Assembly: GCA_965644265.1 (NCBI GenBank)
Contig: CBFFRO010000032.1
Span: 307-64,000 of the forward strand
From: Glycera tridactyla
Lineage: Eukaryota
Direction: 5' to 3'
Length of the DNA: 63,694 nt
The stretch's first letter is position 1. Every line of letters begins with the position of its first letter. Shown one piece after another: positions 33,662 to 53,904 of the stretch. The notes below the pieces were generated by a model, which was not told the DNA's origin, did no database searches, and worked only from the letters and a program-made list of their open reading frames with translations. The position numbers and the translations under genes are program-made.

Positions 33662-34015
33662 CGGACTCTGCCCTCAGCCCCCCTTGCTGCAGGGGGCACA
33701 CGTCTGCAACACAAGACCTTAGAGTCAGAGCCTGGGTACCACACATGTGGGCCCCTAGAACAACAGTCTTCCTGTCAACTCCTTATAAAATTCTATCGAT
33801 CTACCACTCACCCACGAGACCCCTTAAGGCCACCCGCCCGTGACTCCGCATTTGGACAGATTTCACAAAGCAAATTTAATCACCCAATTCACCGCCCACC
33901 ACCCCCTATCTTTGGAGTTGAAGTCGGCTCACCCAGCATGAGAGACAGAGTGGGAGGCCCAACTGGGCCACTCCCACACCACTCTGGATCCCACACCCAA
34001 GCAAGCCCGCCCAAT

Positions 34016-34075
34016 CCGGTTGGCTTGGGTGAGTTCCTGAAGAGGGAAAAATTTCCCGAAACCGAGGACCTCCAT
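34016..34075 (+). ncRNA. Hammerhead-ribozyme-like motif in the PLE inverted arm
   Basis: CTGAAGA (34037-43), stem II GGGAA/TTCCC (34044-57), GAAA (34058-61). ACCG can pair with CGGT at 34017-20. Stem I is imperfect. Confidence 0.65.
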
Positions 34076-34280
34076 GGACAGCCCCTTAAACCACATGGAG
34101 AAGGGAAAGACCAACCCATTTTGGTGATCCCCCAACTGGACCCCCGATCCGCCCAAGCCGTTACCATGGAGAGAGTGTGTTGCGTATATAAGGCGTGGAA
34201 CGACGTGAGTCGTTCAAACCTCGGTAGAACCTTCCCCCCTGAAGGACATTTGCCTCGTTAGGTGGATTCGATCCGCCACC

Positions 34281-34322
<42 letters not shown>

Positions 34323-34700
34323 TTTAGAAATTTGGATATCTATTTATTTATCCATTTATTCATATATATATATATATATCTTTCCATAAATTCTACAGAT
34401 GTTAGTCACGCCATGATCAAAGGTAACCCAGAATGATTAAGAAATGTCACAGTGCGTGGATGTTGTGTGGTTGACGTACTCTGGGATCTATATATCTTAG
34501 GTATCCCCATATGGGGGAATCTCCCAATACCTGTGTATCAATTGAGTTCTGTTACTGTGCCAAATCAGTACAACAAATAACAGTCACAAGATATAGAGTA
34601 TCGGATTAGCTACAAATGTAAGAATCTTGTTTGCTTATTGGAGAGGATAGATTGTTCTTGCAATACTCCACAGAATGCCAATGCAATATGGGGTGTATAC

Positions 34701-34843
34701 GTTTCAATGATTAATGTGCTGGGTAAGGAGCGGATAATACAAGTCCTTCTTTCTCCTATGGAATATGGAACCCAACTGGCTTCTGTTGATTGTTAGTTTC
34801 AATGATTAATGTGCTGGGTAAGGATCGGATGATACAAGTACTT
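34701..34843. repeat. 95-bp direct repeat interrupted by the LTR element (remainder at 51972-52018)
   Basis: Unit 1 is 34701-34795. Unit 2 starts at 34796 and resumes after 51971. Confidence 0.85.
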
Positions 34844-36326
34844 TGAAGTGGGGGAATTCCACTTCTAAGATGTCAGTTCAAAAGTACTTCTCTATTTTCA
34901 AATATGGTTGTGATCGTATAATTAAGTAATCAATCGGGTTTTCAATCAGTGAGTGAATACAAACTCATCCAAGTAGTGTTACAGTCCAGATTTATTGACA
35001 CACAACAGGTACATGAAGTTGTGGCCAATAATGAGTGGTGTAGACAATAAACTAAATGCTAAGTGCTGTGCTCATGATGAAGGGTGATGTGATGTGTGGC
35101 AGAGATGGAAGCAGAGTGACCCTGAGTTCTATTCTCCCCCTGGTTTGTTGAACACACAGCATCATTGGTAGCATCACACACACACACCCCCAGGAGCATG
35201 TAGAAACATAGCAACCACCAACTCATTATCATGCACACAGAGACACCAAAACTACTCACAGTAAATACAAATGAATACATAGCAAAATAATGATATACGC
35301 ATGAACAATAAGCTTCTCTGTCACAGGATATGAATCTATTATTGGTGCTTATGTTTTCAGGTGGGAAAGGTGATGCTCCATCCATAAATAGTACCAAACA
35401 AAATAATTAGTACAGAACAATTGAAATTATATTTGGGTGTAAAGGGGTGTCTGAGACCAGCTTCCTGGCAACCGTATGCACACTCCTGTACACACATACA
35501 CTCGCATGTAGCAAGTTGGTTACCTGGCATCTGTCTGACATGACAACTTTGTTTGGACATGACTGTGACCATCTAAGTGTGGAATCATTACCAATGATAT
35601 CAATCTTATTTATGATCTTCTGTGGCAGGACTGTGTGGGTTGTGACTGATTAGAGCCCAACCTGTATAAAGAGACTGGTCCTTCAGAAGAGGAAGACATA
35701 CAATAAGATATTGCATATGAGGAAGAATGTCTCCTTGATAGACACAATATCAACAGGCATTTTTCAGCACACATGGAGAGATACTTGAGGGGGGTTCTGA
35801 CTCCCCAACTCAGTAACAGGTCACTGACCTGGTGATGCAGGGCATGCTAGTGCCTGCCTGCTGTACAGGGGGGATGCTGAAACCAGATAACATGTTTGCA
35901 TCTGAAATGAGCTTGTGTCATGGAGTCATGTCCATTCCTTTGTATGTTTGGTGACTATTTCATCAGCTAGGAATTGAAGGAAAATAATGATGAAAATGCC
36001 AGAATTGACATTTCTGCTTGTTTCAAAACAGGAAGTAGAATATAAGATGATGACCATTTCCAGGGAGACAGATTGGTTAAATATAAGATCATAGATTGTC
36101 TCAACTGGAATGAGGTCAGCAATAAGCAATATCATAAAATAGGTCAAGTTAGAATATATCAATCAATAGAATAATTCATATTCAGATCACCTTCCTGTGA
36201 TCAGCTCAACTTCATCAATCAATCAAAAACAAATTTCATCTGGCTGTCAACTTCCTGACATTGACATGGCAACCCACCGGTTCCAGTCAAACCTGTCCTC
36301 TTGACAGCACAGATTTCGGTCCTACA
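34844..36326 (-). repeat. LTR (3'-most), 1483 bp
   Basis: Plus strand TGAAG...CCTACA. Candidate minus-strand AATAAA at 34991-34996. Confidence 0.9.
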
Positions 36327-36346
36327 ACTACTCCCCCCCTCAAAAA
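36327..36346 (-). other. Polypurine tract (second copy at 44144-44163)
   Basis: Minus strand TTTTTGAGGGGGGGAGTAGT immediately before the LTR start TGTAGG. Confidence 0.85.
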
Positions 36347-38311
36347 CAGGCACTAGTGTCTGTATGCCAGCGTCCTCGCTGGTAAAAACTAGAGGGTAGT
36401 ATAAGTAAGACACGTGTGTAGGGCCGTAAATTGTGTATGTGAGCGATGTGTGTGAATGTGGCAAGCAGTATGGTGGCGAGTTGTGTGGTGAGTGTCAGTG
36501 TGTGCGTGTTTGCAGCGGCATTGCGGGAAGGTGGGCTGGTGTAGGCGAGGAAAGGAGTGTTTGCGCGCAAGGAGAGGTTGCGGGTAGGAGCGAGTCGCTG
36601 CGTGTGCGTGCGAATGTTTGGCGGTGAGCCGGTGTGAAATGACTGTAAACATGCTTAGTTGAACTGGCGTGACGCTGTTGCTCGTGGACAGGATGAGTGG
36701 CCCTGTGTGTGTGAATGCGCTTGTGTGTGAAGGCAATGGCATGTGTGAGTGTGCGAACAGGGTGCGTGCGTGTGTGAAAATGCTAGTGTGGCGTTGTGTG
36801 ATGGTTTTTGTGTTGCGGGTATGTGACAAAGTGGACTGAGACGACTGAGAAGACACGCGTCGTCAAGCATGCTCCAAACGTAAAGACCTGTGGTAGAAGG
36901 TTTCACGCGCCAATTTTCCAGCAACATAAGACATGGTGTGTGCAAAATAAAAATAAAAATGCAGCAAACCAAAATGACATGATCAAGTAAACAGACAATG
37001 AAACAATGGCAACAAACTGTGAACTGGTGAATGTGTGAGGGCGGGCGGGATGGTAAATGTAAAGAATAAAACATGTGTGATGAGGTGAGTGTGTGGCGTT
37101 TGTTCATTGGCTGGTTGAGTTAAATAAATGTTCACTGATTTGATGCATCTCTGATCCACACGTCCAGGTGGAACAATCGGCAGGAAGACAAAACTGCGAT
37201 CGGGTCTCCCTGAGTCCGCCGACAGGCTGGTCGGCGTGTCTGTGCGTGAGAACATGAAATAAGGCTGCTGGTTGAACCCACCCCGTTTGTCAAGTGCAAC
37301 CCTTGCACTAGCGCCGAAGCGCTCCTAGAATGGCCATCCCACCCCCTAAAGCAGCATATGAAACCCCAAGTGACCACCATATCAAAAAAGGTGGGGCGGG
37401 TGCGACAAGACAACCCGCTTAATTATATGACTCCAGTGCAGGCATGCGACGATGGCCCTGCTGTCGGTGTAGGCGTGAGGTCGATCTGTTGTGCATGTGG
37501 TAAAAGTGCTCCTGGCTCATCTTTGGCGCCCTCTGGCGGTGATGCGTGTAGTGGATATGTGTCGCTGGTTCAGTCTTTCCTGGCTTTGGCGAGATGGCTG
37601 CGTGTGCTCTGCGCCCGTTTAGCAGTTGCCTCGCCTCCACCTATCACCCCAAAATTGCTAGGTGATTCAAATTTCAATCATATCTGGCTTTAGCAGGATG
37701 GCTGCGTGTGCTCTGCGCCCGTTTAGCAGTTGCCCCGCCTCCACCTATCACCCCAAAATAGCTAGGTGATTCAAATTCCATTCAGTATTCAGTGTTGCAT
37801 CTGGGATGGCTGCGTGTGCTCCGCGCCCGTTTAGCAGTTGTCCCATAGCAACTCAAACAAAAACAATGCAATATACATGTACAAAATATATCGAGCACTC
37901 ATGTGCAACAAAGGCAGGACTGCCTGCCTTCTTCATTTCGCAGTACAGTTCAATTCGATTTGTGGATTCCTGACGAGCCTACTTATTCGTGTCTCAGAAG
38001 CTAGACCTCCTTTGATAAGGCTAGCGTGTGAGCAACCCTCGAGACTTGCTCTGGAATTCCATACAAACACACACATGCATAGATCAATTTACAAAACAAT
38101 GCTTCACAGCTTCCATCTGCCTGAGCTGTACCCTTAGTGAAAAACTGAAGTGTGCTAGTGGAGGATGAACCAACCAGGATTTGTCCCAGCTGGTCAGGGA
38201 TCTGTTCCAGAGACCGGTCAAGATCCTCGGCCAGCAAGTGCCAAATTCTGTCTGGTAATGGAGATGAGTATCTACATATGAGGATGAGTGCAAATCTAAA
38301 CTAGAATAATG

Positions 38312-39085
38312 TAGTGGTGGAACGATGATCAAATCTAGTCGAAAGTCGGTTGGTTGCCGAGCTCAATCAAGCGCTTACTTGCAAAAATCGGTAATCGATC
38401 AAATCGGAACCAAAGAACCTGTCTTCCAACGATGTATTTGCGACAATGACCAAGAAAAAGGGGCGGCGTATTCGTTTATTTATTCGTCGCGCCATCTTGT
38501 CAGGTGAAACTTGCGTGGTCACAAACGAAAACGAAATGCGCAATTCAGTGAAAATCCGTGAGATGGCAGAGTTTGTGGTTGTATTTTCGCAGCGCCACAC
38601 CGTGGCGGGAGATGGAAGAAGATGCGCGAAAGACGATTTCACGGGTGTATGCGCAGGATTTGTTAGTTTCACCAGGGAGGCCAAGTTGTCAACTTCGGCA
38701 CGCAAGATAAATTCAAATATACGTTCATCTGTTCATAGAGGGTAGGAATGTGGCGAAAAGCCATAGTCGTTTACGTCGCAAATCGCAAACGAGGTAGCGC
38801 TTCGTCATCTTTACCATGTTGAATTTTGATGTATTTTGATGGCGACCAAGCTCTTACTTATCCACATGCCATTCTATAAAGACAGCGACTGATTCTTGAT
38901 TACGGGATGAGATTGGGTGCTTCGTTACATTTTAGTTCAAGCTTTGGGGCTTGATGGGGCATTCCAAGCTTACTTCAAGCTTGGTTGAAAAATGTCACCT
39001 TTTACATAACCGATTTCGACTGATGATCAGTTGGTAAGTCCCAACCGATGGTCGATTGCGAATTTGCAACCGATTTCTACCACTA
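38312..39085. mobile_element. hAT-like MITE nested in the LTR element (second copy at 46129-46902)
   Basis: TIR TAGTGGTGGAA / TTCTACCACTA. 8-bp TSD GAATAATG / GAATCATG. Confidence 0.75.
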
Positions 39086-40332
39086 GAATCATGACAATGA
39101 TATGGGGTTAGCTACAGTGCATTGCACTCAGCATAACATGCAATAGGGAGGATGATTCTGTCTAAAGAGGGGAGTACAGGAGTAAGTGTTATGCAGACGG
39201 ACATCTGTACAAACAGGTGAGAATATTTGAATCATTAAACAGTATGGTCTAACTAGTGGTTGTTGAGGTAAATGGCAATTTCTATGACGATTATAATTGT
39301 CATTTCACCTTTTTTTTGTGGGTGAGGAAACAATGCAGTTATTTTTTTTTTTTTTTAAGGAACCGGTATGATACATACTGATGGAATCATTCGGTAGAGT
39401 TGAAAGATGTTAGAGGTTCAAAAACCTACTGACATGCTTGATGAGTGTTGGCAAACATTGACAGGGTAGATGGAACTGTCATGCTGTTGTCATGTGAAAT
39501 ATCATTGAATCATTGAGGAATGTCCTATGATGACAATTTTTGAAAGCAATAATGGATGTGAGGATTTCGGACACATTGAAGTGTGCCGAGAGGTCAGCCA
39601 GTGAGATGTCAAAGACAGCAGTGAAATTAGTTACAGTTTGGTATACCTGCACAAGTAGGAACTGGTATAGGGAAGGCAAACAGGATCGCTGCAGAGATGA
39701 GGTGGTCATGAGAGATATGATAGTGGACACAGCTTGTCATGGATTGTGTGGATTTTGATCATAATTACAAGTGCCTTTTTTTTTGGCAATCAGGATGATT
39801 TATGTGACTTGATGAGTCAATTTGATCATCATAATTTGTCTAATAAATTATGAATATTCTATTCAACACCTGATATGCTTCAACTGCAGCCAGTGCAGGA
39901 TCAGCTATCTGATTCTCTGATTTACTGAGAATTAATTATCCTGGCATGATGACATGCCACAATTCCTCTAGAATGTGTATTAATTGATAGTTTGGTTGAG
40001 CAATGATGATTCAAATCTAGAGAGCCTAAAGATGATTGATAGAGTGATATTGTAAGGATCATGCCTTGAAACAAAGAAATCCACCAATATGAAAGCCCAT
40101 GCCTAATCTGGGTCATAGATTTGATTAAAATATTGTATAAGTTATCTTGTGAGAGACAGATGGGGAAGAAACACCAACTCAATATGTGGATGCCTCGGCA
40201 ATCTCACACATTACATGATCACTAAGAGCAAACATATCAATTAAAGGAGGTGAACAAGGATGATTGTTGCACATATACATTCCCATTGTGATAATACAGA
40301 GTGTACCTCATGTTGCTTCAGAATGTTTCTAG

Positions 40333-40395
<63 letters not shown>

Positions 40396-42642
40396 GTTTT
40401 GAAGATTTATGAGGTGATTATGGTCAAATAGAGGGTTTAAAGACAATTGACACAGTCATGATTAAACCATATGTGATCAGATTGTATAGTGATGACCAAG
40501 ATAGTCCCATGATAATTGTTGCAGCTTATTGGTTCTTGCTAATACTATTTCTAATAGCAATTACCATTGATATCATGGGTAGTGGTAGGTGTTATCAGAC
40601 ATGCAGCCCCTATAGAGTCATGCTTGACTGGAGTTTACCTCTCACTATTCACGAATCCCCTGGGAGATGGTCAGGGGATGCTAGAACAAAATAGCAGAAT
40701 TAGTTCCCCCTCTCTTCTATTCTACACACCAGAGATGAGTGGCACCCTGTAGAAATCATTTGGGGAATTCTGTACAACCCATCTCAACCAGAATAGGGGT
40801 AGAATATCAAGTTTCTGATGCCCTAATGAGATGCAGTAGCTACAGACATACTGGGCTTCTTCAGCTGGTGAAACATGACAAGGCTGGTATTCAAACCTAA
40901 AGATCATCCAACTAGCATGCATAATAGCCACAATGATGAAATTACAGAGGTGTCAAACATTAAACCATTAACATATATATTGTATATCAATTCAGGCAAG
41001 TAAATAGGAAGTCAACCAATTAATATGATCTCCATGAATAGTATAGCATGAGGTGGCTGAACAGTGGATGGATGGATGAACAAATGAATGAATGAAATAA
41101 TAAAATCTGTGAATGGTTGAGTGGGGATGAGTAAAATGATTGAGAAAGATGAGTGAATGATTCAGTGAGATGGAGGAATGATTCAATAAATGAGTGACTG
41201 GATGGATATGTAGATGGAATGGATGAAAAGATGGATGGTTGATTGGCTGGATATGTGGTTGAACACACGAAAAAGAATAGTAAAGGTAGTGAATGATGGA
41301 TATGTCTGTCATGTAACATGGAAAATCCGATAGTTTTTCATGACAGAAGTAACTCTTAACTAGCAATGATACTGGAAGGTCAAACGACTATTTCAAAGAG
41401 AAATATTACAATTTGGCTGATTGTTCCATGTCTTCTCAGCACAATCAAGGCTATACAGAAACATCCATGCAATGGATATGAGTGAGATGTTTCTGGGTCC
41501 CCATCAGAAGTAGTGAGTTCATAAAATTCAGACTAAATTGTCATCTCAGGGCAAACAATGTTGTGATTTACATGTTGACTATAATCAATTATTGAGTTTC
41601 TCGAGTAAAATTGGTCATTGATATTGTTCTCATGATCATAAGTGACTCAAGATGATAAGTGGGTCACTGAGTAAATTCCTGATCAGACAGGTGACATGTC
41701 TGTTCAGTTTGCAAATAATCATTGGTTCAGTTAGAGAATGAACTGAACAGCATATGTGAATGATACAATTATATTTGGATCTGGGTGAGTCATGAATGAA
41801 TGTGCACCTGAATTTTTAGGATTTAGGGATTTTGTGCAGGGATATGGGTCAATTGTGCACTAATGGGGCATGTATTCTTATCATTTAAAACAATACAAAT
41901 ATGAAGACACCTAAGAACCATTACTGCCTATTGATGACAAACTGTGCACAGTTATGACTGGAAACACATCTCTGACAATCGAAACTGCAGGCAAAGCTTT
42001 CTAAGTAAAATCACATCAATATGTTTCACATATGAAAATCATTACACAGAAGGAAAAGTGTGAGAAGATTCAGAACCATCACTGCCTATTGGTTGAAATC
42101 TAGGCTGAGAGCCCAACTCCAACAATCAAAAATGCAGTCAAAGCTTTCTAATAAACCCACATAAATCATTCAAGAACATCTACATTGTTATACAAGGCAA
42201 GACTGGGATCCCTGAAAATAAAGAAATGCTCAGTTCTGTAATATAGTCTCCATAAGCCTGGTCGGCCTGACCAGTTTGCCTGATGAGTGGAGAGTGGGAT
42301 AGTCTCCAGTTACAGTCATAATATGAGATGTTGTTCTCCATAATGCCAGTTTCATTTGGGTCCAAACCTGTCATCGAAATGTCTTGAACTCGGAGTTGAA
42401 GAGATGACCGATGAAGTAGATGACGAGTAAAAGTCAATTCACTGGTGTGAAGTGGATGGAAGTCACAGATGGATAAATAACTTGTCCTGATTTGGCACTG
42501 TATAGTTTGCCAGGTAATGTCCACAGAGAATGTAGTACAACTTACAGTTTGTAGAGAGGAAAATTCCAGAGCATGAGATGTTGCTCAGAGAGTGCTCAGT
42601 CCAATTTTCCATCAAGATCCATGTGTAAGAGACAGTGGTTCG

Positions 42643-42660
42643 ATCCTGGTCACGGCACCA
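42643..42660 (-). other. Primer-binding site complementary to the tRNA-His 3' end (second copy at 50468-50485)
   Basis: Minus strand TGGTGCCGTGACCAGGAT, 2 nt after the LTR end. The plus strand equals ATCCTGGTCACGGCA+CCA, the 3' end of invertebrate (e.g. Drosophila) tRNA-His as recalled. Confidence 0.85.
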
Positions 42661-42662
42661 GA

Positions 42663-44143
42663 TGAAGCGGGGGAATTCCACTTCTAAGATGTCAGTTCAA
42701 AAGTACTTCTCTATTTTCAAATATGGTTGTGATCGTATAATTAAGTAATCAATCGGGTTTTCAATCAGTGAGTGAATACAAACTCATCCAAGTAGTGTTA
42801 CAGTCCAGATTTATTGACACACAACAGGTACATGAAGTTGTGGCCAATAATGAGTGGTGTAGACAATAAACTAAATGCTAAGTGCTGTGCTCATGATGAA
42901 GGGTGATGTGATGTGTGGCAGAGATGGAAGCAGAGTGACCCTGAGTTCTATTCTCCCCCTGGTTTGTTGAACACACAGCATCATTGGTAGCATCACACAC
43001 ACACACCCCCAGGAGCATGTAGAAACATAGCAACCACCAACTCATTATCATGCACACAGAGACACCAAAACTACTCACAGTAAATACAAATGAATACATA
43101 GCAAAATAATGATATACGCATGAACAATAAGCTTCTCTGTCACAGGATATGAATCTATTATTGGTGCTTATGTTTTCAGGTGGGAAAGGTGATGCTCCAT
43201 CCATAAATAGTACCAAACAAAATAATTAGTACAGAACAATTGAAATTATATTTGGGTGTAAAGGGGTGTCTGAGACCAGCTTCCTGGCAACCGTATGCAC
43301 ACTCCTGTACACACATACACTCGCATGTAGCAAGTTGGTTACCTGGCATCTGTCTGACATGACAACTTTGTTTGGACATGACTGTGACCATCTAAGTGTG
43401 GAATCATTACCAATGATATCAATCTTATTTATGATCTTCTGTGGCAGGACTGTGTGGGTTGTGACTGATTAGAGCCCAACCTGTATAAAGAGACTGGTCC
43501 TTCAGAAGAGGAAGACATACAATAAGATATTGCATATGAGGAAGAATGTCTCCTTGATAGACACAATATCAACAGGCATTTTTCAGCACACATGGAGATA
43601 CTTGAGGGGGGTTCTGACTCCCCAACTCAGTAACAGGTCACTGACCTGGTGATGCAGGGCATGCTAGTGCCTGCCTGCTGTACAGGGGGGATGCTGAAAC
43701 CAGATAACATGTTTGCATCTGAAATGAGCTTGTGTCATGGAGTCATGTCCATTCCTTTGTATGTTTGGTGACTATTTCATCAGCTAGGAATTGAAGGAAA
43801 ATAATGATGAAAATGCCAGAATTGACATTTCTGCTTGTTTCAAAACAGGAAGTAGAATATAAGATGATGACCATTTCCAGGGAGACAGATTGGTTAAATA
43901 TAAGATCATAGATTGTCTCAACTGGAATGAGGTCAGCAATAAGCAATATCATAAAATAGGTCAAGTTAGAATATATCAATCAATAGAATAATTCATATTC
44001 AGATCACCTTCCTGTGATCAGCTCAACTTCATCAATCAATCAAAAACAAATTTCATCTGGCTGTCAACTTCCTGACATTGACATGGCAACCCACCGGTTC
44101 CAGTCAAACCTGTCCTCTTGACAGCACAGATTTCGGTCCTACA
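42663..44143 (-). repeat. Shared middle LTR, 1481 bp
   Basis: Near-identical to the other two LTRs. Confidence 0.9.
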
Positions 44144-47100
44144 ACTACTCCCCCCCTCAAAAACAGGCACTAGTGTCTGTATGCCAGCGTCCTCGCTGGT
44201 AAAAACTAGAGGGTAGTATAAGTAAGACACGTGTGTAGGGCCGTAAATTGTGTATGTGAGCGATGTGTGTGAATGTGGCAAGCAGTATGGTGGCGAGTTG
44301 TGTGGTGAGTGTCAGTGTGTGCGTGTTTGCAGCGGCATTGCGGGAAGGTGGGCTGGTGTAGGCGAGGAAAGGAGTGTTTGCGCGCAAGGAGAGGTTGCGG
44401 GTAGGAGCGAGTCGCTGCGTGTGCGTGCGAATGTTTGGCGGTGAGCCGGTGTGAAATGACTGTAAACATGCTTAGTTGAACTGGCGTGACGCTGTTGCTC
44501 GTGGACAGGATGAGTGGCCCTGTGTGTGTGAATGCGCTTGTGTGTGAAGGCAATGGCATGTGTGAGTGTGCGAACAGGGTGCGTGCGTGTGTGAAAATGC
44601 TAGTGTGGCGTTGTGTGATGGTTTTTGTGTTGCGGGTATGTGACAAAGTGGACTGAGACGACTGAGAAGACACGCGTCGTCAAGCATGCTCCAAACGTAA
44701 AGACCTGTGGTAGAAGGTTTCACGCGCCAATTTTCCAGCAACATAAGACATGGTGTGTGCAAAATAAAAATAAAAATGCAGCAAACCAAAATGACATGAT
44801 CAAGTAAACAGACAATGAAACAATGGCAACAAACTGTGAACTGGTGAATGTGTGAGGGTGGGCGGGATGGTAAATGTAAAGAATAAAACATGTGTGATGA
44901 GGTGAGTGTGTGGCGTTTGTTCATTGGCTGGTTGAGTTAAATAAATGTTCACTGATTTGATGCATCTCTGATCCACACGTCCAGGTGGAACAATCGGCAG
45001 GAAGACAAAACTGCGATCGGGTCTCCCTGAGTCCGCCGACAGGCTGGTCGGCGTGTCTGTGCGTGAGAACATGAAATAAGGCTGCTGGTTGAACCCACCC
45101 CGTTTGTCAAGTGCAACCCTTGCACTAGCGCCGAAGCGCTCCTAGAATGGCCATCCCACCCCCTAAAGCAGCATATGAAACCCCAAGTGACCACCATATC
45201 GAAAAAGGTGGGGCGGGTGCGACAAGACAACCCGCTTAATTATATGACTCCAGTGCAGGCATGCGACGATGGCCCTGCTGTCGGTGTAGGCGTGAGGTCG
45301 ATCTGTTGTGCATGTGGTAAAAGTGCTCCTGGCTCATCTTTGGCGCCCTCTGGCGGTGATGCGTGTAGTGGATATGTGTCGCTGGTTCAGTCTTTCCTGG
45401 CTTTGGCGAGATGGCTGCGTGTGCTCTGCGCCCGTTTAGCAGTTGCCTCGCCTCCACCTATCACCCCAAAATTGCTAGGTGATTCAAATTTCAATCATAT
45501 CTGGCTTTAGCAGGATGGCTGCGTGTGCTCCGCGCCCGTTTAGCAGTTGCCCCGCCTCCACCTATCACCCCAAAATAGCTAGGTGATTCAAATTCCATTC
45601 AGTATTCAGTGTTGCATCTGGGATGGCTGCGTGTGCTCCGCGCCCGTTTAGCAGTTGTCCCATAGCAACTCAAACAAAAACAATGCAATATACATGTACA
45701 AAATATATCGAGCACTCATGTGCAACAAAGGCAGGACTGCCTGCCTTCTTCATTTCGCAGTACAGTTCAATTCGATTTGTGGATTCCTGACGAGCCTACT
45801 TATTCGTGTCTCAGAAGCTAGACCTCCTTTGATAAGGCTAGCGTGTGAGCAACCCTCGAGACTTGCTCTGGAATTCCATACAAACACACACATGCATAGA
45901 TCAATTTACAAAACAATGCTTCACAGCTTCCATCTGCCTGAGCTGTACCCTTAGTGAAAAACTGAAGTGTGCTAGTGGAGGATGAACCAACCAGGATTTG
46001 TCCCAGCTGGTCAGGGATCTGTTCCAGAGACCGGTCAAGATCCTCGGCCAGCAAGTGCCAAATTCTGTCTGGTAATGGAGATGAGTATCTACATATGAGG
46101 ATGAGTGCAAATCTAAACTAGAATAATGTAGTGGTGGAACGATGATCAAATCTAGTCGAAAGTCGGTTGGTTGCCGAGCTCAATCAAGCGCTTACTTGCG
46201 AAAATCGGTAATCGATCAAATCGGAACCAAAGAACCTGTCTTCCAACGATGTATTTGCGACAATGACCAAGAAAAAGGGGCGGCGTATTCGTTTATTTAT
46301 TCGTCGCGCCATCTTGTCAGGTGAAACTTGCGTGGTCACAAACGAAAACGAAATGCGCAATTCAGTGAAAATCCGTGAGATGGCAGAGTTTGTGGTTGTA
46401 TTTTCGCAGCGCCACACCGTGGCGGGAGATGGAAGAAGATGCGCGAAAGACGATTTCACGGGTGTATGCGCAGGATTTGTTAGTTTCACCAGGGAGGCCA
46501 AGTTGTCAACTTCGGCACGCAAGATAAATTCAAATATACGTTCATCTGTTCATAGAGGGTAGGAATGTGGCGAAAAGCCATAGTCGTTTACGTCGCAAAT
46601 CGCAAACGAGGTAGCGCTTCGTCATCTTTACCATGTTGAATTTTGATGTATTTTGATGGCGACCAAGCTCTTACTTATCCACATGCCATTCTATAAAGAC
46701 AGCGACTGATTCTTGATTACGGGATGAGATTGGGTGCTTCGTTACATTTTAGTTCAAGCTTTGGGGCTTGATGGGGCATTCCAAGCTTACTTCAAGCTTG
46801 GTTGAAAAATGTCACCTTTTACATAACCGATTTCGACTGATGATCAGTTGGTAAGTCCCAACCGATGGTCGATTGCGAATTTGCAACCGATTTCTACCAC
46901 TAGAATCATGACAATGATATGGGGTTAGCTACAGTGCATTGCACTCAGCATAACATGCAATAGGGAGGATGATTCTGTCTAAAGAGGGGAGTACAGGAGT
47001 AAGTGTTATGCAGACGGACATCTGTACAAACAGGTGAGAATATTTGAATCATTAAACAGTATGGTCTAACTAGTGGTTGTTGAGGTAAATGGCAATTTCT

Positions 47101-48149
47101 ATGACGATTATAATTGTCATTTCACCTTTTTTTTGTGGGTGAGGAAACAATGCAGTTATTTTTTTTTTTTTTTAAGGAACCGGTATGATACATACTGATG
47201 GAATCATTCGGTAGAGTTGAAAGATGTTAGAGGTTCAAAAACCTACTGACATGCTTGATGAGTGTTGGCAAACATTGACAGGGTAGATGGAACTGTCATG
47301 CTGTTGTCATGTGAAATATCATTGAATCATTGAGGAATGTCCTATGATGACAATTTTTGAAAGCAATAATGGATGTGAGGATTTCGGACACATTGAAGTG
47401 TGCCGAGAGGTCAGCCAGTGAGATGTCAAAGACAGCAGTGAAATTAGTTACAGTTTGGTATACCTGCACAAGTAGGAACTGGTATAGGGAAGGCAAACAG
47501 GATCGCTGCAGAGATGAGGTGGTCATGAGAGATATGATAGTGGACACAGCTTGTCATGGATTGTGTGGATTTTGATCATAATTACAAGTGCCTTTTTTTT
47601 TGGCAATCAGGATGATTTATGTGACTTGATGAGTCAATTTGATCATCATAATTTGTCTAATAAATTATGAATATTCTATTCAACACCTGATATGCTTCAA
47701 CTGCAGCCAGTGCAGGATCAGCTATCTGATTCTCTGATTTACTGAGAATTAATTATCCTGGCATGATGACATGCCACAATTCCTCTAGAATGTGTATTAA
47801 TTGATAGTTTGGTTGAGCAATGATGATTCAAATCTAGAGAGCCTAAAGATGATTGATAGAGTGATATTGTAAGGATCATGCCTTGAAACAAAGAAATCCA
47901 CCAATATGAAAGCCCATGCCTAATCTGGGTCATAGATTTGATTAAAATATTGTATAAGTTATCTTGTGAGAGACAGATGGGGAAGAAACACCAACTCAAT
48001 ATGTGGATGCCTCGGCAATCTCACACATTACATGATCACTAAGAGCAAACATATCAATTAAAGGAGGTGAACAAGGATGATTGTTGCACATATACATTCC
48101 CATTGTGATAATACAGAGTGTACCTCATGTTGCTTCAGAATGTTTCTAG

Positions 48150-48220
<71 letters not shown>

Positions 48221-50487
48221 GTTTTGAAGATTTATGAGGTGATTATGGTCAAATAGAGGGTTTAAAGACAATTGACACAGTCATGATTAAACCATATGTG
48301 ATCAGATTGTATAGTGATGACCAAGATAGTCCCATGATAATTGTTGCAGCTTATTGGTTCTTGCTAATACTATTTCTAATAGCAATTACCATTGATATCA
48401 TGGGTAGTGGTAGGTGTTATCAGACATGCAGCCCCTATAGAGTCATGCTTGACTGGAGTTTACCTCTCACTATTCACGAATCCCCTGGGAGATGGTCAGG
48501 GGATGCTAGAACAAAATAGCAGAATTAGTTCCCCCTCTCTTCTATTCTACACACCAGAGATGAGTGGCACCCTGTAGAAATCATTTGGGGAATTCTGTAC
48601 AACCCATCTCAACCAGAATAGGGGTAGAATATCAAGTTTCTGATGCCCTAATGAGATGCAGTAGCTACAGACATACTGGGCTTCTTCAGCTGGTGAAACA
48701 TGACAAGGCTGGTATTCAAACCTAAAGATCATCCAACTAGCATGCATAATAGCCACAATGATGAAATTACAGAGGTGTCAAACATTAAACCATTAACATA
48801 TATATTGTATATCAATTCAGGCAAGTAAATAGGAAGTCAACCAATTAATATGATCTCCATGAATAGTATAGCATGAGGTGGCTGAACAGTGGATGGATGG
48901 ATGAACAAATGAATGAATGAAATAATAAAATCTGTGAATGGTTGAGTGGGGATGAGTAAAATGATTGAGAAAGATGAGTGAATGATTCAGTGAGATGGAG
49001 GAATGATTCAATAAATGAGTGACTGGATGGATATGTAGATGGAATGGATGAAAAGATGGATGGTTGATTGGCTGGATATGTGGTTGAACACACGAAAAAG
49101 AATAGTAAAGGTAGTGAATGATGGATATGTCTGTCATGTAACATGGAAAATCCGATAGTTTTTCATGACAGAAGTAACTCTTAACTAGCAATGATACTGG
49201 AAGGTCAAACGACTATTTCAAAGAGAAATATTACAATTTGGCTGATTGTTCCATGTCTTCTCAGCACAATCAAGGCTATACAGAAACATCCATGCAATGG
49301 ATATGAGTGAGATGTTTCTGGGTCCCCATCAGAAGTAGTGAGTTCATAAAATTCAGACTAAATTGTCATCTCAGGGCAAACAATGTTGTGATTTACATGT
49401 TGACTATAATCAATTATTGAGTTTCTCGAGTAAAATTGGTCATTGATATTGTTCTCATGATCATAAGTGACTCAAGATGATAAGTGGGTCACTGAGTAAA
49501 TTCCTGATCAGACAGGTGACATGTCTGTTCAGTTTGCAAATAATCATTGGTTCAGTTAGAGAATGAACTGAACAGCATATGTGAATGATACAATTATATT
49601 TGGATCTGGGTGAGTCATGAATGAATGTGCACCTGAATTTTCAGGATTTAGGGATTTTGTGCAGGGATATGGGTCAATTGTGCACTAATGGGGCATGTAT
49701 TCTTATCATTTAAAACAATAGAAATATGGAGACACCTAAGAACCATTACTGCCTATTGATGACAAACTGTGCACAGTTATGACTGGAAACACATCTCTGA
49801 CAATCGAAACTGCAGGCAAAGCTTTCTAAGTAAAATCACATCAATATGTTTCACATATGAAAATCATTACACAGAAGGAAAAGTGTGAGAAGATTCAGAA
49901 CCATCACTGCCTATTGGTTGAAATCTAGGCTGAGAGCCCAACTCCAACAATCAAAAATGCAGTCAAAGCTTTCTAATAAACCCACATAAATCATTCAAGA
50001 ACATCTACATTGTTATACAAGGCAAGACTGGGATCCCTGAAAATAAAGAAATGCTCAGTTCTGTAATATAGTCTCCATAAGCCTGGTCGGCCTGACCAGT
50101 TTGCCTGATGAGTGGAGAGTGGGATAGTCTCCAGTTACAGTCATAATATGAGATGTTGTTCTCCATAATGCCAGTTTCATTTGGGTCCAAACCTGTCATC
50201 GAAATGTCTTGAACTCGGAGTTGAAGAGATGACCGATGAAGTAGATGACGAGTAAAAGTCAATTCACTGGTGTGAAGTGGATGGAAGTCACAGATGGATA
50301 AATGACTTGTCCTGATTTGGCACTGTATAGTTTGCCAGGTAATGTCCACAGAGAATGTAGTACAACTTACAGTTTGTAGAGAGGAAAATTCCAGAGCATG
50401 AGATGTTGCTCAGAGAGTGCTCAGTCCAATTTTCCATCAAGATCCATGTGTAAGAGACAGTGGTTCGATCCTGGTCACGGCACCAGA

Positions 50488-51967
50488 TGAAGCGGGGGAA
50501 TTCCACTTCTAAGATGTCAGTTCAAAAGTACTTCTCTATTTTCAAATATGGTTGTGATCGTATAATTAAGTAATCAATCGGGTTTTCAATCAGTGAGTGA
50601 ATACAAACTCATCCAAGTAGTGTTACAGTCCAGATTTATTGACACACAACAGGTACATGAAGTTGTGCCAATAATGAGTGGTGTCGACAATAAACTAAAT
50701 GCTAAGTGCTGTGCTCATGATGAAGGGTGATGTGATGTGTGGCAGAGATGGAAGCAGAGTGACCCTGAGTTCTATTCTCCCCCTGGTTTGTTGAACACAC
50801 AGCATCATTGGTAGCATCACACACACACACCCCCAGGAGCATGTAGAAACATAGCAACCACCAACTCATTATCATGCACACAGAGACACCAAAACTACTC
50901 ACAGTAAATACAAATGAATACATAGCAAAATAATGATATACGCATGAACAATAAGCTTCTCTGTCACAGGATATGAATCTATTATTGGTGCTTATGTTTT
51001 CAGGTGGGAAAGGTGATGCTCCATCCATAAATAGTACCAAACAAAATAATTAGTACAGAACAATTGAAATTATATTTGGGTGTAAAGGGGTGTCTGAGAC
51101 CAGCTTCCTGGCAACCGTATGCACACTCCTGTACACACATACACTCGCATGTAGCAAGTTGGTTACCTGGCATCTGTCTGACATGACAACTTTGTTTGGA
51201 CATGACTGTGACCATCTAAGTGTGGAATCATTACCAATGATATCAATCTTATTTATGATCTTCTGTGGCAGGACTGTGTGGGTTGTGACTGATTAGAGCC
51301 CAACCTGTATAAAGAGACTGGTCCTTCAGAAGAGGAAGACATACAATAAGATATTGCATATGAGGAAGAATGTCTCCTTGATAGACACAATATCAACAGG
51401 TATTTTTCAGCACACATGGAGATACTTGAGGGGGGTTCTGACTCCCCAACTCAGTAACAGGTCACTGACCTGGTGATGCAGGGCATGCTAGTGCCTGCCT
51501 GCTGTACAGGGGGGATGCTGAAACCAGATAACATGTTTGCATCTGAAATGAGCTTGTGTCATGGAGTCATGTCCATTCCTTTGTATGTTTGGTGACTATT
51601 TCATCAGCTAGGAATTGAAGGAAAATAATGATGAAAATGCCAGAATTGACATTTCTGCTTGTTTCAAAACAGGAAGTAGAATATAAGATGATGACCATTT
51701 CCAGGGAGACAGATTGGTTAAATATAAGATCATAGATTGTCTCAACTGGAATGAGGTCAGCAATAAGCAATATCATAAAATAGGTCAAGTTAGAATATAT
51801 CAATCAATAGAATAATTCATATTCAGATCACCTTCCTGTGATCAGCTCAACTTCATCAATCAATCAAAAACAAATTTCATCTGGCTGTCAACTTCCTGAC
51901 ATTGACATGGCAACCCACCGGTTCCAGTCAAACCTGTCCTCTTGACAGCACAGATTTCGGTCCTACA
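50488..51967 (-). repeat. LTR (5'-most), 1480 bp
   Basis: Near-identical to the other two LTRs and followed by the TSD ACTT. Confidence 0.9.
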
Positions 51968-53904
51968 ACTTCTCTCTCCTTTGAAATATGGAACCCTACT
52001 GGCTTCTGTTGATCGTTATTGAGAGAGCTTGACCACTGTTTCCATGCAAAATTTGCCTGGACAAGGTTGGCGGGCTTTGGGCTGGCAACCTAGAAGTGAG
52101 TGTATTCATTTGAGTTTGGCTGTACGAACAGCAAGAATGGTCTGATGATCCCTGTGTGTTTACTCTCAGATTTGTCAAGTCCATGTAGCTTCCTCTCTAT
52201 TTGATGTTTCAACACAGACTACAGTTGAATCTGTCAACAATTATGGTGATATGTTTTTCGAAATTGTCAGAAATGCACAAAGGTAACATTTAATATATTA
52301 TACGATCAATTTGTCTAGTAATACGTCCCTGCCAATAACACAGATTTCCTCAAGATAGGGCATTGACAGAACAATTGTCTATCCTATAGGGTGATTTGTA
52401 GCATACACGGAAGAAAGTTTTCTTGTTTCACAGCATAAAGCTAACCATCTATAAATTTGGATAATACTTTTCTCAGTCCTGACAGATCTATTTGTTCCTT
52501 TCTCTAACATGATAATCTCATTGATTGCGAGAAATGATTCCAACTGATGTCTGACAATCAATATGATATATTTAAGTCGTCCTAATCGTCAAATGTGACT
52601 GATGTACTGCATTGTTTCGTAGCAGTCAATGAATCCTTCGATTTACTGAGAAATCATCATCATGACTTGTAGATTTTTTTGGCATTAGGCTTCAAAACAA
52701 GAAAGACCACCTGTATGAAAGGCTTTGCCTATCGCTATGCCATGTTGTGATTGAATTTTTCTATTAATCATTCAACAAATAAAGAGAAACTGTTATTTCC
52801 ACTCGTCACCACCAGGTGTCAGGCACTCTAACCAATAGGCACCTCACTGAGTGGCTGTTAATATGTAATATACATTTCTGGATCCGTATCAGCTTTTGTT
52901 CAGGGAATGTGGGAGTGATGTTTGCAGATGAAAATGCATCTATCCCTCGTAGGTCAGGAATACCCGATATACACAATCCCATGTGCTGATACATACCTTT
53001 GAACTCAGACCATCATGCTGGGAGAAGGAGTCTTGAATGATCCCAAACCATGCTCATTGCACGGGCATCACAATACAGCACACGACGCGACGCTGCCAGT
53101 TGACATGTGACCATATGCTTCATAACGACAAATGAGTTATATCCAGAATCTGATCTGTGGTAGAAAAGCAAGAGACCGATGGCTTCGGTCCCGTCAAATC
53201 GCTTCACCAATCCCACCTTGTGAAAGATTTAACTGGCATAGTTTCTTGCTATATGCATGAAGTCATGGGCAGACTGGAACTCTGGGGAGACCCTGTCACC
53301 TGATGTACAACATATCTGCGTTGAGACCATTCCGGTACCAACCAGTCGGGCTAGGCTGTGTTAACTAGATCCTTTATGACCCCCAGACCAACCAACTAGA
53401 AGGAATTCTAGGGATACCTAGTTACCTGAATTTGGTCAAAGGGAATTGAAAAGGCATATGTGCCACTACACAACTGACACAATTGTCACACTAGAAAGTC
53501 TGTAGGTTGCAGAACAGTCTCCTTTAGGCATTTTTTCTATGGATTTATTATCATATAACAATATAACAAATAAGATAATAATATATGAAGGAGCCATGCA
53601 GATCTACATCTAGATCCAAGTTAACATGTATAACCACGTTTAAACATCTTTGTTGATATTATCACAGTAAATTTGAATTTCACCCACTCTCCTGAACATC
53701 TCCTCCCTCCCCCAACTATATCGATAAGAACAAATAATTTGTATAAGAACTGAATTTCAAAAGTGCCCTTATCATTTTTACTTTATTAACTGCATTTTGA
53801 TCTTTATTCCTGCCGTAACATGCATAGGTACTGCCAATCAGGTTGGCCAAAATTATCTATTTATCTCATCATGCCTTCGCACCGCATGACCCTTAACAGA
53901 AATG

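What the first reader, a model, noticed from the sequence alone, without database searches (positions are those of the whole stretch)
34844..51967. Young, fully non-coding 9.3-kb LTR retroelement present as a tandem dimer between two chemoreceptor genes
Seen: every cis signal is intact (TG..CA, ACTT TSD, PBS, U-tract + PPT), and the LTRs differ at only ~5 sites I could spot. Yet the 6.3-kb interior has no recognisable gag, protease, RT, RNase H or integrase, and its longest ORF is 155 aa of low-complexity sequence. The interior resembles host intergenic DNA ((TG)n, GGAT/GAAT tracts, a MITE). Established: such LARDs are described mainly in plants, and 4-bp TSDs are typical of many Ty3/Gypsy lineages. 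Inference: an active animal LARD family parasitising an unknown tRNA-His-primed helper and transporting host-like cargo. This is the best candidate for an undescribed system in the window.
Basis: partly seen in the sequence, partly recalled or inferred. Interest (0 to 1): 0.75.

Follow-up and report, generated by a model that had tools for sequence, protein, structure and literature searches.

The report
Non-coding LTR retrotransposon, tandem dimer
This is a real, very young, protein-less jumping gene of a marine worm that must borrow its enzymes from related coding elements and was doubled in place by recombination between its own end repeats; every feature has known precedents in plants, insects and mice.

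Summary
Window 34844-51967 is LTR-interior-LTR-interior-LTR, with 1.48-kb LTRs and 6.34-kb interiors. It reads on the minus strand and is flanked by one ACTT target-site duplication. Its primer-binding site (PBS) is an exact 18-nt complement of the genome's own tRNA-His. It also has a polypurine tract (PPT) and a polyadenylation signal.

No gag or pol trace was found in 111 open segments. The family (A) has about 36 units at about 25 loci, and LTR pairs differ at 0-7 sites.

Four loci are tandem arrays inside a single TSD. The middle LTRs are 3'-LTR-like on the left and 5'-LTR-like on the right, which points to unequal LTR x LTR crossover after insertion.

The helper is no longer fully unknown. 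Gag-bearing elements 11-12 kb long (G) share the PPT, the LTR start and the last 800 nt of the interior at 98-99%.

The interior is retroelement-derived and mosaic, not host cargo. Most copies carry an imperfect PBS. This copy is one of three apparently repaired from the tRNA primer, a pattern described for mouse ETn/MusD.

Verdict: new member of a known kind, modest interest. Earlier notes of this scan report other defective Gypsy derivatives on other DNA of this genome, none shown to be this family.

The parts
34840..34843 (.). Target-site duplication ACTT (3' side of the minus-strand element)
   Evidence: Sequence; it matches 51968-51971. 4-bp TSDs flank 15 of 18 family loci.
34844..36326 (-). 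3'-most LTR (1483 nt), TGTAGG...ACTTCA in element orientation. It carries the ancestral A at LTR position 1478 and a private TC insertion.
34991..34996 (-). The only AATAAA of the LTR (LTR position 1331-1336), a likely polyadenylation signal. This puts R/U5 in the last ~150 nt.
   Evidence: the function is inferred.
36327..36343 (-). Polypurine tract region TTGAGGGGGGGAGTAGT abutting the LTR start
   Evidence: The 32-nt PPT+U3 junction matches the window's with no mismatch at 30 genomic sites, including four gag-bearing long elements.
36327..42662 (-). Interior unit 1 (6336 nt), non-coding. It contains a 104-nt x2.5 repeat (37580-37844) and (TG)29 (40336-40394).
   Evidence: no Pfam family among 111 open segments; conserved in other copies
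36327..37126 (-). Last 800 nt of the interior, shared at 98-99% with the gag-bearing long elements (G)
39663..40263 (-). Interior segment (about interior positions 2400-3000) shared at 89-90% with the 7.5-kb non-autonomous forms of family H
40835..42662 (-). First ~1.8 kb of the interior (leader), 72-89% identical to sister family B, which has a different LTR
42643..42660 (-). PBS TGGTGCCGTGACCAGGAT, an exact complement of tRNA-His(GTG) 3' end plus CCA. The next 6 nt (42637-42642, CGAACC) pair with the T-loop, skipping A58.
42663..44143 (-). Shared middle LTR (1481 nt). It matches the 3' LTR at LTR positions 569-1303 and the 5' LTR at position 1478.
44144..50487 (-). Interior unit 2 (6344 nt). 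It differs from unit 1 at 8 substitutions and one 8-nt CA-repeat indel. Its PPT is at 44144-44160 and its PBS at 50468-50485.
50488..51967 (-). 5'-most LTR (1480 nt). It has three private changes and the derived G at position 1478, which it shares with the middle LTR.
51968..51971 (.). Target-site duplication ACTT (5' side of the element)

Best explanation
The block is one insertion of a non-autonomous, protein-less LTR retrotransposon (LARD type; here 'family A') of a marine annelid, lying on the minus strand.

Inferred life cycle: it is transcribed from its 5' LTR and polyadenylated at the AATAAA in the 3' LTR. The RNA is packaged, reverse-transcribed from a tRNA-His primer and the PPT, and integrated with a 4-bp TSD. 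The proteins come in trans from related Ty3/Gypsy-like elements.

The best helper candidates are the gag-bearing long relatives 'G'. They share the PPT, the LTR 5' end and the last 800 nt of interior. A second candidate is the tRNA-His family 'H', which has a similar U5 end.

Family A is a mosaic. Its 3' interior, PPT and U3 start match G. Its U5, PBS and leader match the B/H type. Its mid-interior matches the short H forms. This is what recombination between co-packaged RNAs would produce.

After insertion, unequal homologous recombination between the 5' and 3' LTRs (sister chromatids or homologues) produced the dimer with a shared, chimeric middle LTR inside the original TSD.

Most family copies spread with an imperfect PBS. 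This copy is one of three in which the 18 nt were apparently rewritten from the tRNA-His primer during reverse transcription.

Shown: the anatomy, the family, TSDs, the PBS/tRNA match, absence of detectable coding, the shared segments and the chimeric middle LTRs. Inferred: transcription, trans-mobilisation, helper identity, and the recombination and PBS-repair histories.
For: Structure and signals.

tRNA-His: 113 identical tRNA-His(GTG) genes have a 3' end plus CCA exactly complementary to the PBS. The predicted duplex is -48.8 kcal/mol for the perfect PBS and -34.0 for the common one.

No coding: the longest ORF is 155 aa. No retroelement Pfam domain appears in 53 six-frame segments of 45 aa or more, or in 58 sense segments of 24-44 aa. 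tblastx found no match to gag regions of other tRNA-His elements.

Family:
- 107 LTR starts and 36 PBS junctions at about 25 loci.
- Interiors of independent copies are 97.2-98.9% alike.
- LTR pairs differ at 0-7 of 1480 sites, and 15 of 18 loci have 4-bp TSDs.
- One solo LTR with a TSD (L020).

Tandems:
- The window, C17 (2 units), C4:67.46 Mb (3 units) and C13 (8 units). The window, C17 and C13 arrays were checked and each lies inside one TSD; the C4 flanks were not read.
- Units within an array are 99.5-99.9% alike.
- The middle LTR shares a derived G with the 5' LTR at its right end (window). It shares a derived A with the 3' LTR at its left end (C17).

Helper candidates:
- G loci show the same 30-nt LTR start and the same 32-nt PPT/U3 junction with 0 mismatches.
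- They show the same 35 nt upstream and 98-99% identity over the last 800 nt of interior.
- A Gag homologue lies 2.2 kb from the LTR start, in a 428-aa open frame.
- H has a 430-aa Gag frame open in at least 10 copies and 11.1-kb LTR spacing.

PBS:
- The perfect and common forms differ only inside the 18 nt.
- The perfect form sits on three different backgrounds.
- No other genomic sequence matches the common PBS.
- The same pattern is seen in H.
- Precedent in mouse ETn/MusD/IAP: PMC7472051.
Against: - No pol gene of G or H was seen.
- G lacks A's U5 end, leader and a tRNA-His PBS within the mismatch limits used. Whether its proteins act on A is therefore open.
- Transcription is weakly supported. 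Only four small contigs were found in one polyA metatranscriptome. The other runs that hold the family may be DNA.
- The crossover model rests on one informative site in each of two arrays.
- Spliced ORFs and very degenerate coding remnants shorter than 24 aa cannot be excluded.
- An open frame of about 130 codons after the PBS is kept in A (12 of 18 copies) and in B. Its dN/dS of 0.6-0.74 is near neutral.
Confidence: 0.8

Rival explanations
1. The dimer was integrated as a dimer and not made in place. One route is a read-through transcript of a parental tandem. The other is concatemeric or one-LTR-circle-derived cDNA. The structure would then be born with its single TSD.
For: Both routes are considered possible for plant tandems (PMC11899658). 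The unit-to-unit difference (0.13%) is about as small as the LTR-to-LTR difference. Tandems are frequent in this clade: A, B and H-like arrays.
Against: After reverse transcription of a dimeric RNA the two outer LTRs should start identical. Here the 5' and middle LTRs share a derived G at position 1478 while the 3' LTR keeps the ancestral A. In C17 the middle and 3' LTRs share a derived A. This left-3'-like, right-5'-like chimera is the signature of LTR x LTR crossover. Each array has its own private variants and differs 2-2.5% from other loci, so no parental dimer is evident.
Confidence: 0.15
2. It is a decayed, once-autonomous provirus whose genes have eroded beyond recognition, not a dedicated non-autonomous family.
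For: The last 800 nt of interior are shared with gag-bearing long elements, so the family descends in part from a coding element.
Against: The LTRs are 99.7-99.9% alike, so there has been no time for in-place erosion. The same ORF-less 6.3-kb interior is present at about 25 loci with fresh TSDs and near-identical LTR pairs, so it was copied in the non-coding state. No domain remnant appears in 111 open segments.
Confidence: 0.03
3. It is a 7.8-kb host tandem or segmental duplication, or an assembly artefact, that only mimics an LTR element.
For: The repeat is tandem here and at three other loci. No read spans the structure in the data that could be laid.
Against: Copies are dispersed on at least 20 contigs, each with its own 4-bp TSD. 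There is an exact tRNA-His PBS, a PPT and TG...CA ends. The two units differ at 8 substitutions and indels, so they are not a collapsed or duplicated read.
Confidence: 0.02

Closest known systems
LARDs (large retrotransposon derivatives) of Triticeae, and the LARD class of the Wicker TE classification
   Same: Long LTRs, PBS, PPT and TSD. A conserved internal domain of several kb without gag or pol. Multi-copy and presumed to be mobilised in trans. (The definition is from my own knowledge and from the description in PMC3286476.)
   Different: The host is an annelid. The LTRs are 1.5 kb, against about 4.5 kb in barley LARDs. The interior is a mosaic shared with elements carrying three different LTR types. 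Gag-bearing relatives with the same PPT and LTR start are present in the same genome.
Non-coding LTR retrotransposons of Culex quinquefasciatus (cqUNK families; PMC3286476)
   Same: Animal LTR elements of 3-14.6 kb with PBS, TSD and internal tandem repeats, lacking all coding capacity.
   Different: The Culex families had no identifiable master or partner. Here a coding relative can be pointed to. The Culex TSDs listed are 5 bp, here 4 bp.
Mouse ETn / MusD non-autonomous/autonomous ERV pair (PMC7472051)
   Same: A non-coding element shares its ends with a coding partner. The commonest PBS is mismatched to the tRNA primer. Perfect-PBS copies are scattered over the tree and attributed to copying of the tRNA primer.
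   Different: The mouse elements are class II ERVs primed by tRNA-Lys3. Here the elements are Ty3/Gypsy-like and primed by tRNA-His, and the common PBS also carries a 3-nt insertion. No functional or small-RNA data exist here.
Tandem LTR-retrotransposon arrays with shared internal LTRs (rice and other plants, PMC11899658; Drosophila, PMC5932611; Cassandra TRIM arrays, PMC7215508)
   Same: An LTR-int-LTR-int-LTR layout inside one TSD, with variable unit number (2 to 8 here). Solo LTRs are a sister product.
   Different: None in kind. Here 4 of about 25 loci and 15 of 36 units are tandem, a high share for a low-copy family. Chimeric middle LTRs give direct support for crossover.

Membership tests
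LTR retrotransposon (order LTR) | Two or more direct long terminal repeats ending TG...CA | tested here: met
   Three 1.48-kb copies 99.7-99.9% alike, TGTAGG...CTTCA on the minus strand
LTR retrotransposon (order LTR) | Short target-site duplication flanking the element | tested here: met
   ACTT on both sides. Matching 4-bp TSDs at 15 of 18 loci of the family.
LTR retrotransposon (order LTR) | PBS complementary to a host tRNA 3' end next to the 5' LTR | tested here: met
   18 of 18 nt complementary to the genome's tRNA-His(GTG) plus CCA, 2 nt after the LTR
LTR retrotransposon (order LTR) | Polypurine tract next to the 3' LTR | tested here: met
   GAGGGGGGGAGTAGT abuts the LTR start and is conserved in all copies
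LARD (non-autonomous LTR element above 4 kb) | No gag, protease, RT, RNase H or integrase coding capacity | tested here: met
   Longest ORF 155 aa. No retroelement Pfam family in 111 open segments. No tblastx match to gag regions. Spliced models and read-through translations were not searched.
LARD (non-autonomous LTR element above 4 kb) | Conserved internal domain shared by many copies | tested here: met
   Full 6.3-kb interior in at least 20 copies at 97.2-98.9% pairwise identity
LARD (non-autonomous LTR element above 4 kb) | Mobilised in trans by an autonomous partner | not testable with these tools
   Partner candidates only. G shares the PPT, U3 start and last 800 nt and has a Gag frame. 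Its pol was not seen.
Ty3/Gypsy superfamily | RT/integrase phylogeny and domain order | not testable with these tools
   Family A has no pol. The relatives' Gag gives Ty3_capsid and Retrotrans_gag hits below Pfam's cut-offs for H (E 4e-4), and above the cut-off for other tRNA-His families.
Tandem LTR-retrotransposon array formed by LTR x LTR unequal recombination | Units share internal LTRs, one TSD encloses the whole array, and the middle LTR is a 3'-LTR/5'-LTR chimera | tested here: met
   Single TSD round the window, C17 and C13 arrays. One shared derived site of the predicted polarity in each of two arrays. Support is thin: one site each.
Imperfect-PBS / tRNA-copied 'perfect revertant' pattern (mouse ETn, MusD, IAP) | The commonest PBS is mismatched. 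Perfect copies are rare, lie on unrelated backgrounds and differ only within the 18 nt copied from the tRNA. | tested here: met
   22 loci imperfect against 3 perfect. Differences lie only inside the 18 nt. The three perfect copies have different LTR subtypes and are no closer to each other than to other copies. Imperfect copies with identical LTR pairs exist. The role of tRNA fragments was not tested.

The most novel reading that the evidence does not exclude
One non-coding ~6-kb core may persist by repeatedly swapping ends with different coding Ty3/Gypsy lineages. It is found with G-type, B-type and H-type LTRs. The swap would occur by recombination of co-packaged RNAs, making it a modular 'hyperparasite' that changes helpers. 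In this whole clade the imperfect PBS would be the selected, propagating state, for example to evade 3' tRNA-fragment silencing. Perfect tRNA-His PBS copies such as this one would be dead-end by-products of priming. This would extend the mouse 'priming versus silencing' trade-off to a lophotrochozoan.
Probability: 0.25. Interest if true: 0.6.

Novelty: new member of a known kind. Interest (0 to 1): 0.35.

Why it matters
It gives a clean, young and well-delimited example of a protein-less LTR retrotransposon in an annelid, with candidate coding relatives in the same genome. It carries direct sequence footprints of three processes usually inferred only indirectly:
- tRNA-templated rewriting of the PBS.
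- LTR x LTR unequal crossover building arrays of 2 to 8 units.
- Exchange of LTRs between lineages.

For genome annotation it matters that such elements and their tandem arrays are missed by protein-based TE finders. It does not reveal a new kind of system.

Tried and rejected
1. Retroelement domains in the interior: Pfam on 53 six-frame segments and 58 short sense segments found nothing relevant. The best hit was an archaeal DUF at E 0.0024 among 53 queries, which is chance.
2. tblastx of gag-containing tRNA-His elements against the interior: only low-complexity hits.
3. MITE or inverted repeats in the interior: none.
4. Rfam on 34000-44500: nothing near any gathering score, no ribozyme and no tRNA-like unit. 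ARAGORN found no tRNA in the window.
5. The conserved ~130-codon open frame after the PBS in A and B: dN/dS is 0.6-0.74 and it is lost in 6 of 18 copies. It is not accepted as a gene.
6. A tRNA-like gene matching the common imperfect PBS: none in the genome.
7. RVT_1 search of the whole genome to catch the pol of G or H: 53,893 candidates, and the 150 scored all lie elsewhere, so it was uninformative.
I did not try to read those letters by other means.
9. Expression: the laid runs are contigs. Three may be DNA, and one polyA metatranscriptome gave four small pieces, so there is no firm evidence.
10. Earlier findings searched by sequence: blank.
11. Spliced translations of the interior were not attempted.
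Only per-column tallies were used to polarise five sites.
Full report
**1. Anatomy**

A self-comparison of the window shows three copies of a 1.48-kb repeat at 34844-36326, 42663-44143 and 50488-51967. They are separated by two 6.34-kb interiors (36327-42662 and 44144-50487). The two LTR+interior units are 99.75% alike over 9315 nt.

On the + strand the block begins TGAAG and ends CTACA, and it is flanked by ACTT on both sides. The element reads on the minus strand:
- The LTR is TGTAGGACC...CACTTCA.
- Two bases after the upstream LTR comes TGGTGCCGTGACCAGGAT.
- The downstream LTR is preceded by a T-run and TTGAGGGGGGGAGTAGT.
- The LTR has a single AATAAA at position 1331 of 1483, which fits a short R/U5 at its end.

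The three LTRs differ at five events. The interiors differ at 8 substitutions and one (CA)4 indel.

**2. The primer**

The genome (2.04 Gb in 207 contigs; the window is C50:307-64000) has 113 identical tRNA genes with anticodon GTG (His), mostly in a 1864-bp tandem array. Their last 15 nt plus CCA are the exact complement of the 18-nt PBS.

The next six element bases (CGAACC) pair with the T-loop if A58 is bulged out. A58 is the position that is normally 1-methylated and stops reverse transcriptase (established knowledge). The predicted duplex is 24 bp at -48.8 kcal/mol.

**3. Coding capacity**

The longest ORF is 155 aa of low complexity. I scanned 53 stop-free segments of 45 aa or more from all six frames, and 58 sense-strand segments of 24-44 aa. 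None gave a gag, protease, RT, RNase H or integrase hit at E up to 1. tblastx against the gag-containing regions of other tRNA-His elements of this genome gave only low-complexity matches.

An open frame of about 130 codons just after the PBS is kept in 12 of 18 copies and in a sister family. Its dN/dS is 0.6-0.74, and young copies have lost it. I do not accept it as a gene.

No Rfam family, tRNA or inverted repeat (MITE) is present in the interior. Spliced models and read-through translations were not searched.

**4. It is a family, and it is young**

- The LTR start occurs 107 times.
- The LTR-end/PBS junction occurs 36 times at about 25 loci.
- The full interior recurs at 95-97% BLAST identity, or 97.2-98.9% ignoring gaps, in a star-like pattern.
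- In 18 loci that I could read, 15 have a matching 4-bp TSD, each different. LTR pairs within an element differ at 0-7 of about 1480 sites, and four pairs are identical.
- A solo LTR with a TSD (L020) and internal-deletion derivatives (L008, L009) also exist.

So does the first, 'degenerate gag/pol'.

**5. Why it is a dimer**

Four of about 25 loci are tandem:
- The window, with 2 units.
- C17:51.31 Mb, with 2 units.
- C4:67.46 Mb, with 3 units.
- C13:57.30-57.37 Mb, with 8 units.

The window, C17 and C13 arrays each lie inside a single TSD: ACTT, GTAG and GGCC. The flanks of the C4 array were not read. Units within an array are 99.5-99.9% alike, while different loci differ by 2-2.5%. The arrays therefore grew in place, or arrived whole.

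Unequal crossover between a 3' LTR and a 5' LTR predicts a specific chimera. The middle LTR should be 3'-LTR-like on its left and 5'-LTR-like on its right. I polarised the variable sites with 37 other LTRs.
- In the window, the middle and 5' LTRs share a derived G at position 1478 while the 3' LTR keeps the family's A.
- In C17, the middle and 3' LTRs share a derived A at column 137 while the 5' LTR keeps G.
- No site contradicts the model.

This favours post-insertion LTR x LTR recombination, the mechanism accepted for Drosophila tandems (PMC5932611) and discussed for plants (PMC11899658). With only one informative site per array, integration as a dimer keeps about 15%.

**6. Relatives and likely helpers**

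The exact tRNA-His 18-mer occurs only 40 times in the genome. The ±1.5-kb loci round 30 of these sites fall into several families.
- Several have Gag ORFs after the PBS, with Retrotrans_gag, Ty3_capsid or zf-CCHC hits. One set has a Baculo_F-like ORF.
- Family B (L035, L044, L050) has a different LTR. It has the same PBS plus CGAACC, and a leader 72-89% identical to the first 1.8 kb of this interior. Its LTR spacing is about 7.4 kb and it also forms tandems.
- Family H (L027) shares the U5 end (GAGAATTCCTCCACTTCA against TGGAATTTCCCCACTTCA) and shows weak R-U5 homology. Its LTR copies recur 11.1 kb apart and are 99-100% alike. Its 430-aa Gag frame is open in at least 10 copies. H also has 7.5-kb forms with only a 98-aa Gag stub.

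The key result came from pattern searches. Four elements have LTR starts 11.3-12.4 kb apart: C28:10142775-10155040, C11:65020612-65031908, C29:87807747-87820196 and C1:99034467-99046404. I call them 'G'. They share the following with family A:
- Exactly A's first 30 LTR bases.
- A's 32-nt PPT/U3 junction with no mismatch.
- The 35 nt before it.
- The last 800 nt of A's interior at 98-99%.

Each also has a Gag homologue, 54-57% identical to H Gag, about 2.2 kb from the LTR start. The frame is 428 aa without a stop in one copy.

Both LTRs of every G element lack A's U5 end, and G lacks A's leader and the perfect PBS within the limits used. G is therefore a true family and not an A copy with a nested insertion. 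G also lacks interior positions 2400-3200. That segment is instead 89-90% identical in the 7.5-kb H forms.

Family A is thus a mosaic:
- Its 3' interior, PPT and U3 start match G.
- Its U5, PBS and leader match the B/H type.
- Its mid-interior is shared with short H forms.
- Its LTRs come in subtypes that differ only in a central ~650-nt block.

An RNA with a 5' end from one lineage and a 3' end from another gives U3(3' parent)-R-U5(5' parent) LTRs after one replication cycle (established retroviral mechanism). Recombination between co-packaged RNAs explains the mosaic, though this is inference.

The interior is therefore retroelement-derived and not 'host-like cargo'. The pol genes of G and H could not be examined.

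**7. The PBS footprint**

Only three loci of family A have the perfect PBS: this window, C4:54.56 Mb and C17:108.29 Mb. Twenty-two loci have TGAGGCCGTGAACATCAGGAT instead.
- The two forms differ only inside the 18 nt that reverse transcriptase copies from the tRNA: two substitutions, and C replaced by ACAT. The flanks are identical.
- The imperfect form still pairs strongly with tRNA-His (-34.0 kcal/mol, helped by the CGAACC extension).
- It is present in copies with identical LTR pairs.
- It matches no other sequence in the genome, so no alternative primer gene exists.
- Its ACATCAGGATC string is shared with a segment downstream of the PBS in family B, which suggests it is the older state.
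- The three perfect copies sit on different LTR subtypes and are no closer to one another than to other copies.

Family H shows the same pattern. One copy is perfect, and about 25 others differ by about three substitutions and a 2-nt indel in the 100 nt round the PBS.

The simplest reading is that the imperfect PBS is the propagating state, and the perfect PBS is occasionally written in from the tRNA-His primer during plus-strand synthesis. The same pattern and reading were published for mouse ETn, MusD and IAP, with evasion of 3' tRNA fragments proposed as the selective force (PMC7472051). Here it serves as evidence that tRNA-His really is the primer. The selective explanation is untested.

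**8. Expression and distribution**

Runs of two organism labels hold 47-65% of the sampled words of the stretch. Their contigs cover all of 40700-46600, including both LTR/interior junctions, and they carry the family's common variants such as the imperfect PBS. These runs may be DNA.

One polyA metatranscriptome has four small contigs at depth 3-8. Transcription is therefore plausible but not shown.

**9. Comparison and verdict**

By structure this meets every testable criterion of a LARD-type non-autonomous LTR retrotransposon. Such elements are known in animals: 38 non-coding LTR families in Culex and MaLR (PMC3286476), and ETn (PMC7472051). Tandem arrays with shared LTRs and one TSD are known in Drosophila, kangaroos, plants and TRIMs (PMC5932611, PMC11899658, PMC7215508).

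Earlier notes of this scan describe other defective Gypsy derivatives in the same genome, and they describe the organism as a marine (bristle) worm. I did not test those notes.

The finding is real and nicely documented, but it is a new member of a known kind. Its more unusual sides deserve a follow-up and do not change the class. These are the shared non-coding core on three LTR backbones, the high share of tandem loci, and the PBS footprint in a lophotrochozoan.

Noticed in passing
window 31928-33451 (-): A 507-aa ORF with RVT_1 (E 4e-6) and a GIY-YIG domain (E 0.002), the Penelope-like element combination. It lies 1.4 kb from the LTR element.
   Followed up: partly
window 24519-25187 (+) and 60042-60704 (+): Two ORFs of about 220 aa are 70% identical to each other and flank the element at 10 and 8 kb. 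The ESM Atlas neighbours of the second are arthropod clusters, some with 7tm_7/Trehalose_recp (gustatory-receptor-like).
   Followed up: partly
G000:C1:94714703-94967895 and C1:109426134-109441117: 113 identical tRNA-His(GTG) genes, nearly all spaced exactly 1864 bp apart. This is a large tandem array of a tRNA-bearing repeat unit.
   Followed up: no
L039:1610-3016 (G000:C28:8108323-8111340) and neighbours L040-L043: A cluster of five tRNA-His PBS sites lies within 58 kb. In L039 a 469-aa ORF with a Baculovirus F (env-like) domain (E 3e-16) starts about 110 nt after the PBS, where gag would normally sit. Neighbours L040 and L041 have gag there instead.
   Followed up: no
G000:C1:48369775-48400363: Four Gag-bearing units, 97% identical to H Gag, are spaced 9.9 kb apart. 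This is a tandem array of a coding LTR element, so tandem formation is not limited to the non-coding families.
   Followed up: no
G000:C34:28401104-28417477 and C34:17409331-17422088: Sister family B also forms tandem arrays (LTR spacing 7.44 kb, and PPT junctions 6.36 kb apart). Its LTR is about 1.73 kb and starts TGTAGGACTGAAATT after the same PPT.
   Followed up: partly
window 42183-42584 (-), and L044/L050/L035 at about 157-534 nt after the PBS: A stop-free frame of 124-134 codons just after the PBS is kept in families A and B despite about 25% nucleotide divergence and an 8-codon indel. Its dN/dS is 0.6-0.74. It is probably an RNA-level constraint or chance, but it remains unexplained.
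   Followed up: yes
window 44451-44642: A contig of a polyA metatranscriptome run (X5) joins 44451 to 44642. It skips 190 nt with one extra A and has no GT..AG ends on either strand. It is probably a deleted family copy and not an intron.
   Followed up: no
L005, L006, L017 (G000:C1:141.88 Mb, C28:13.94 Mb, C11:80.15 Mb): Three full-length copies have no matching TSD, although two of them have identical LTR pairs. They are possibly products of recombination between copies at different loci.
   Followed up: no
window 6824-7038 and 11235-11389: Two runs of N (215 and 155 nt).
   Followed up: no
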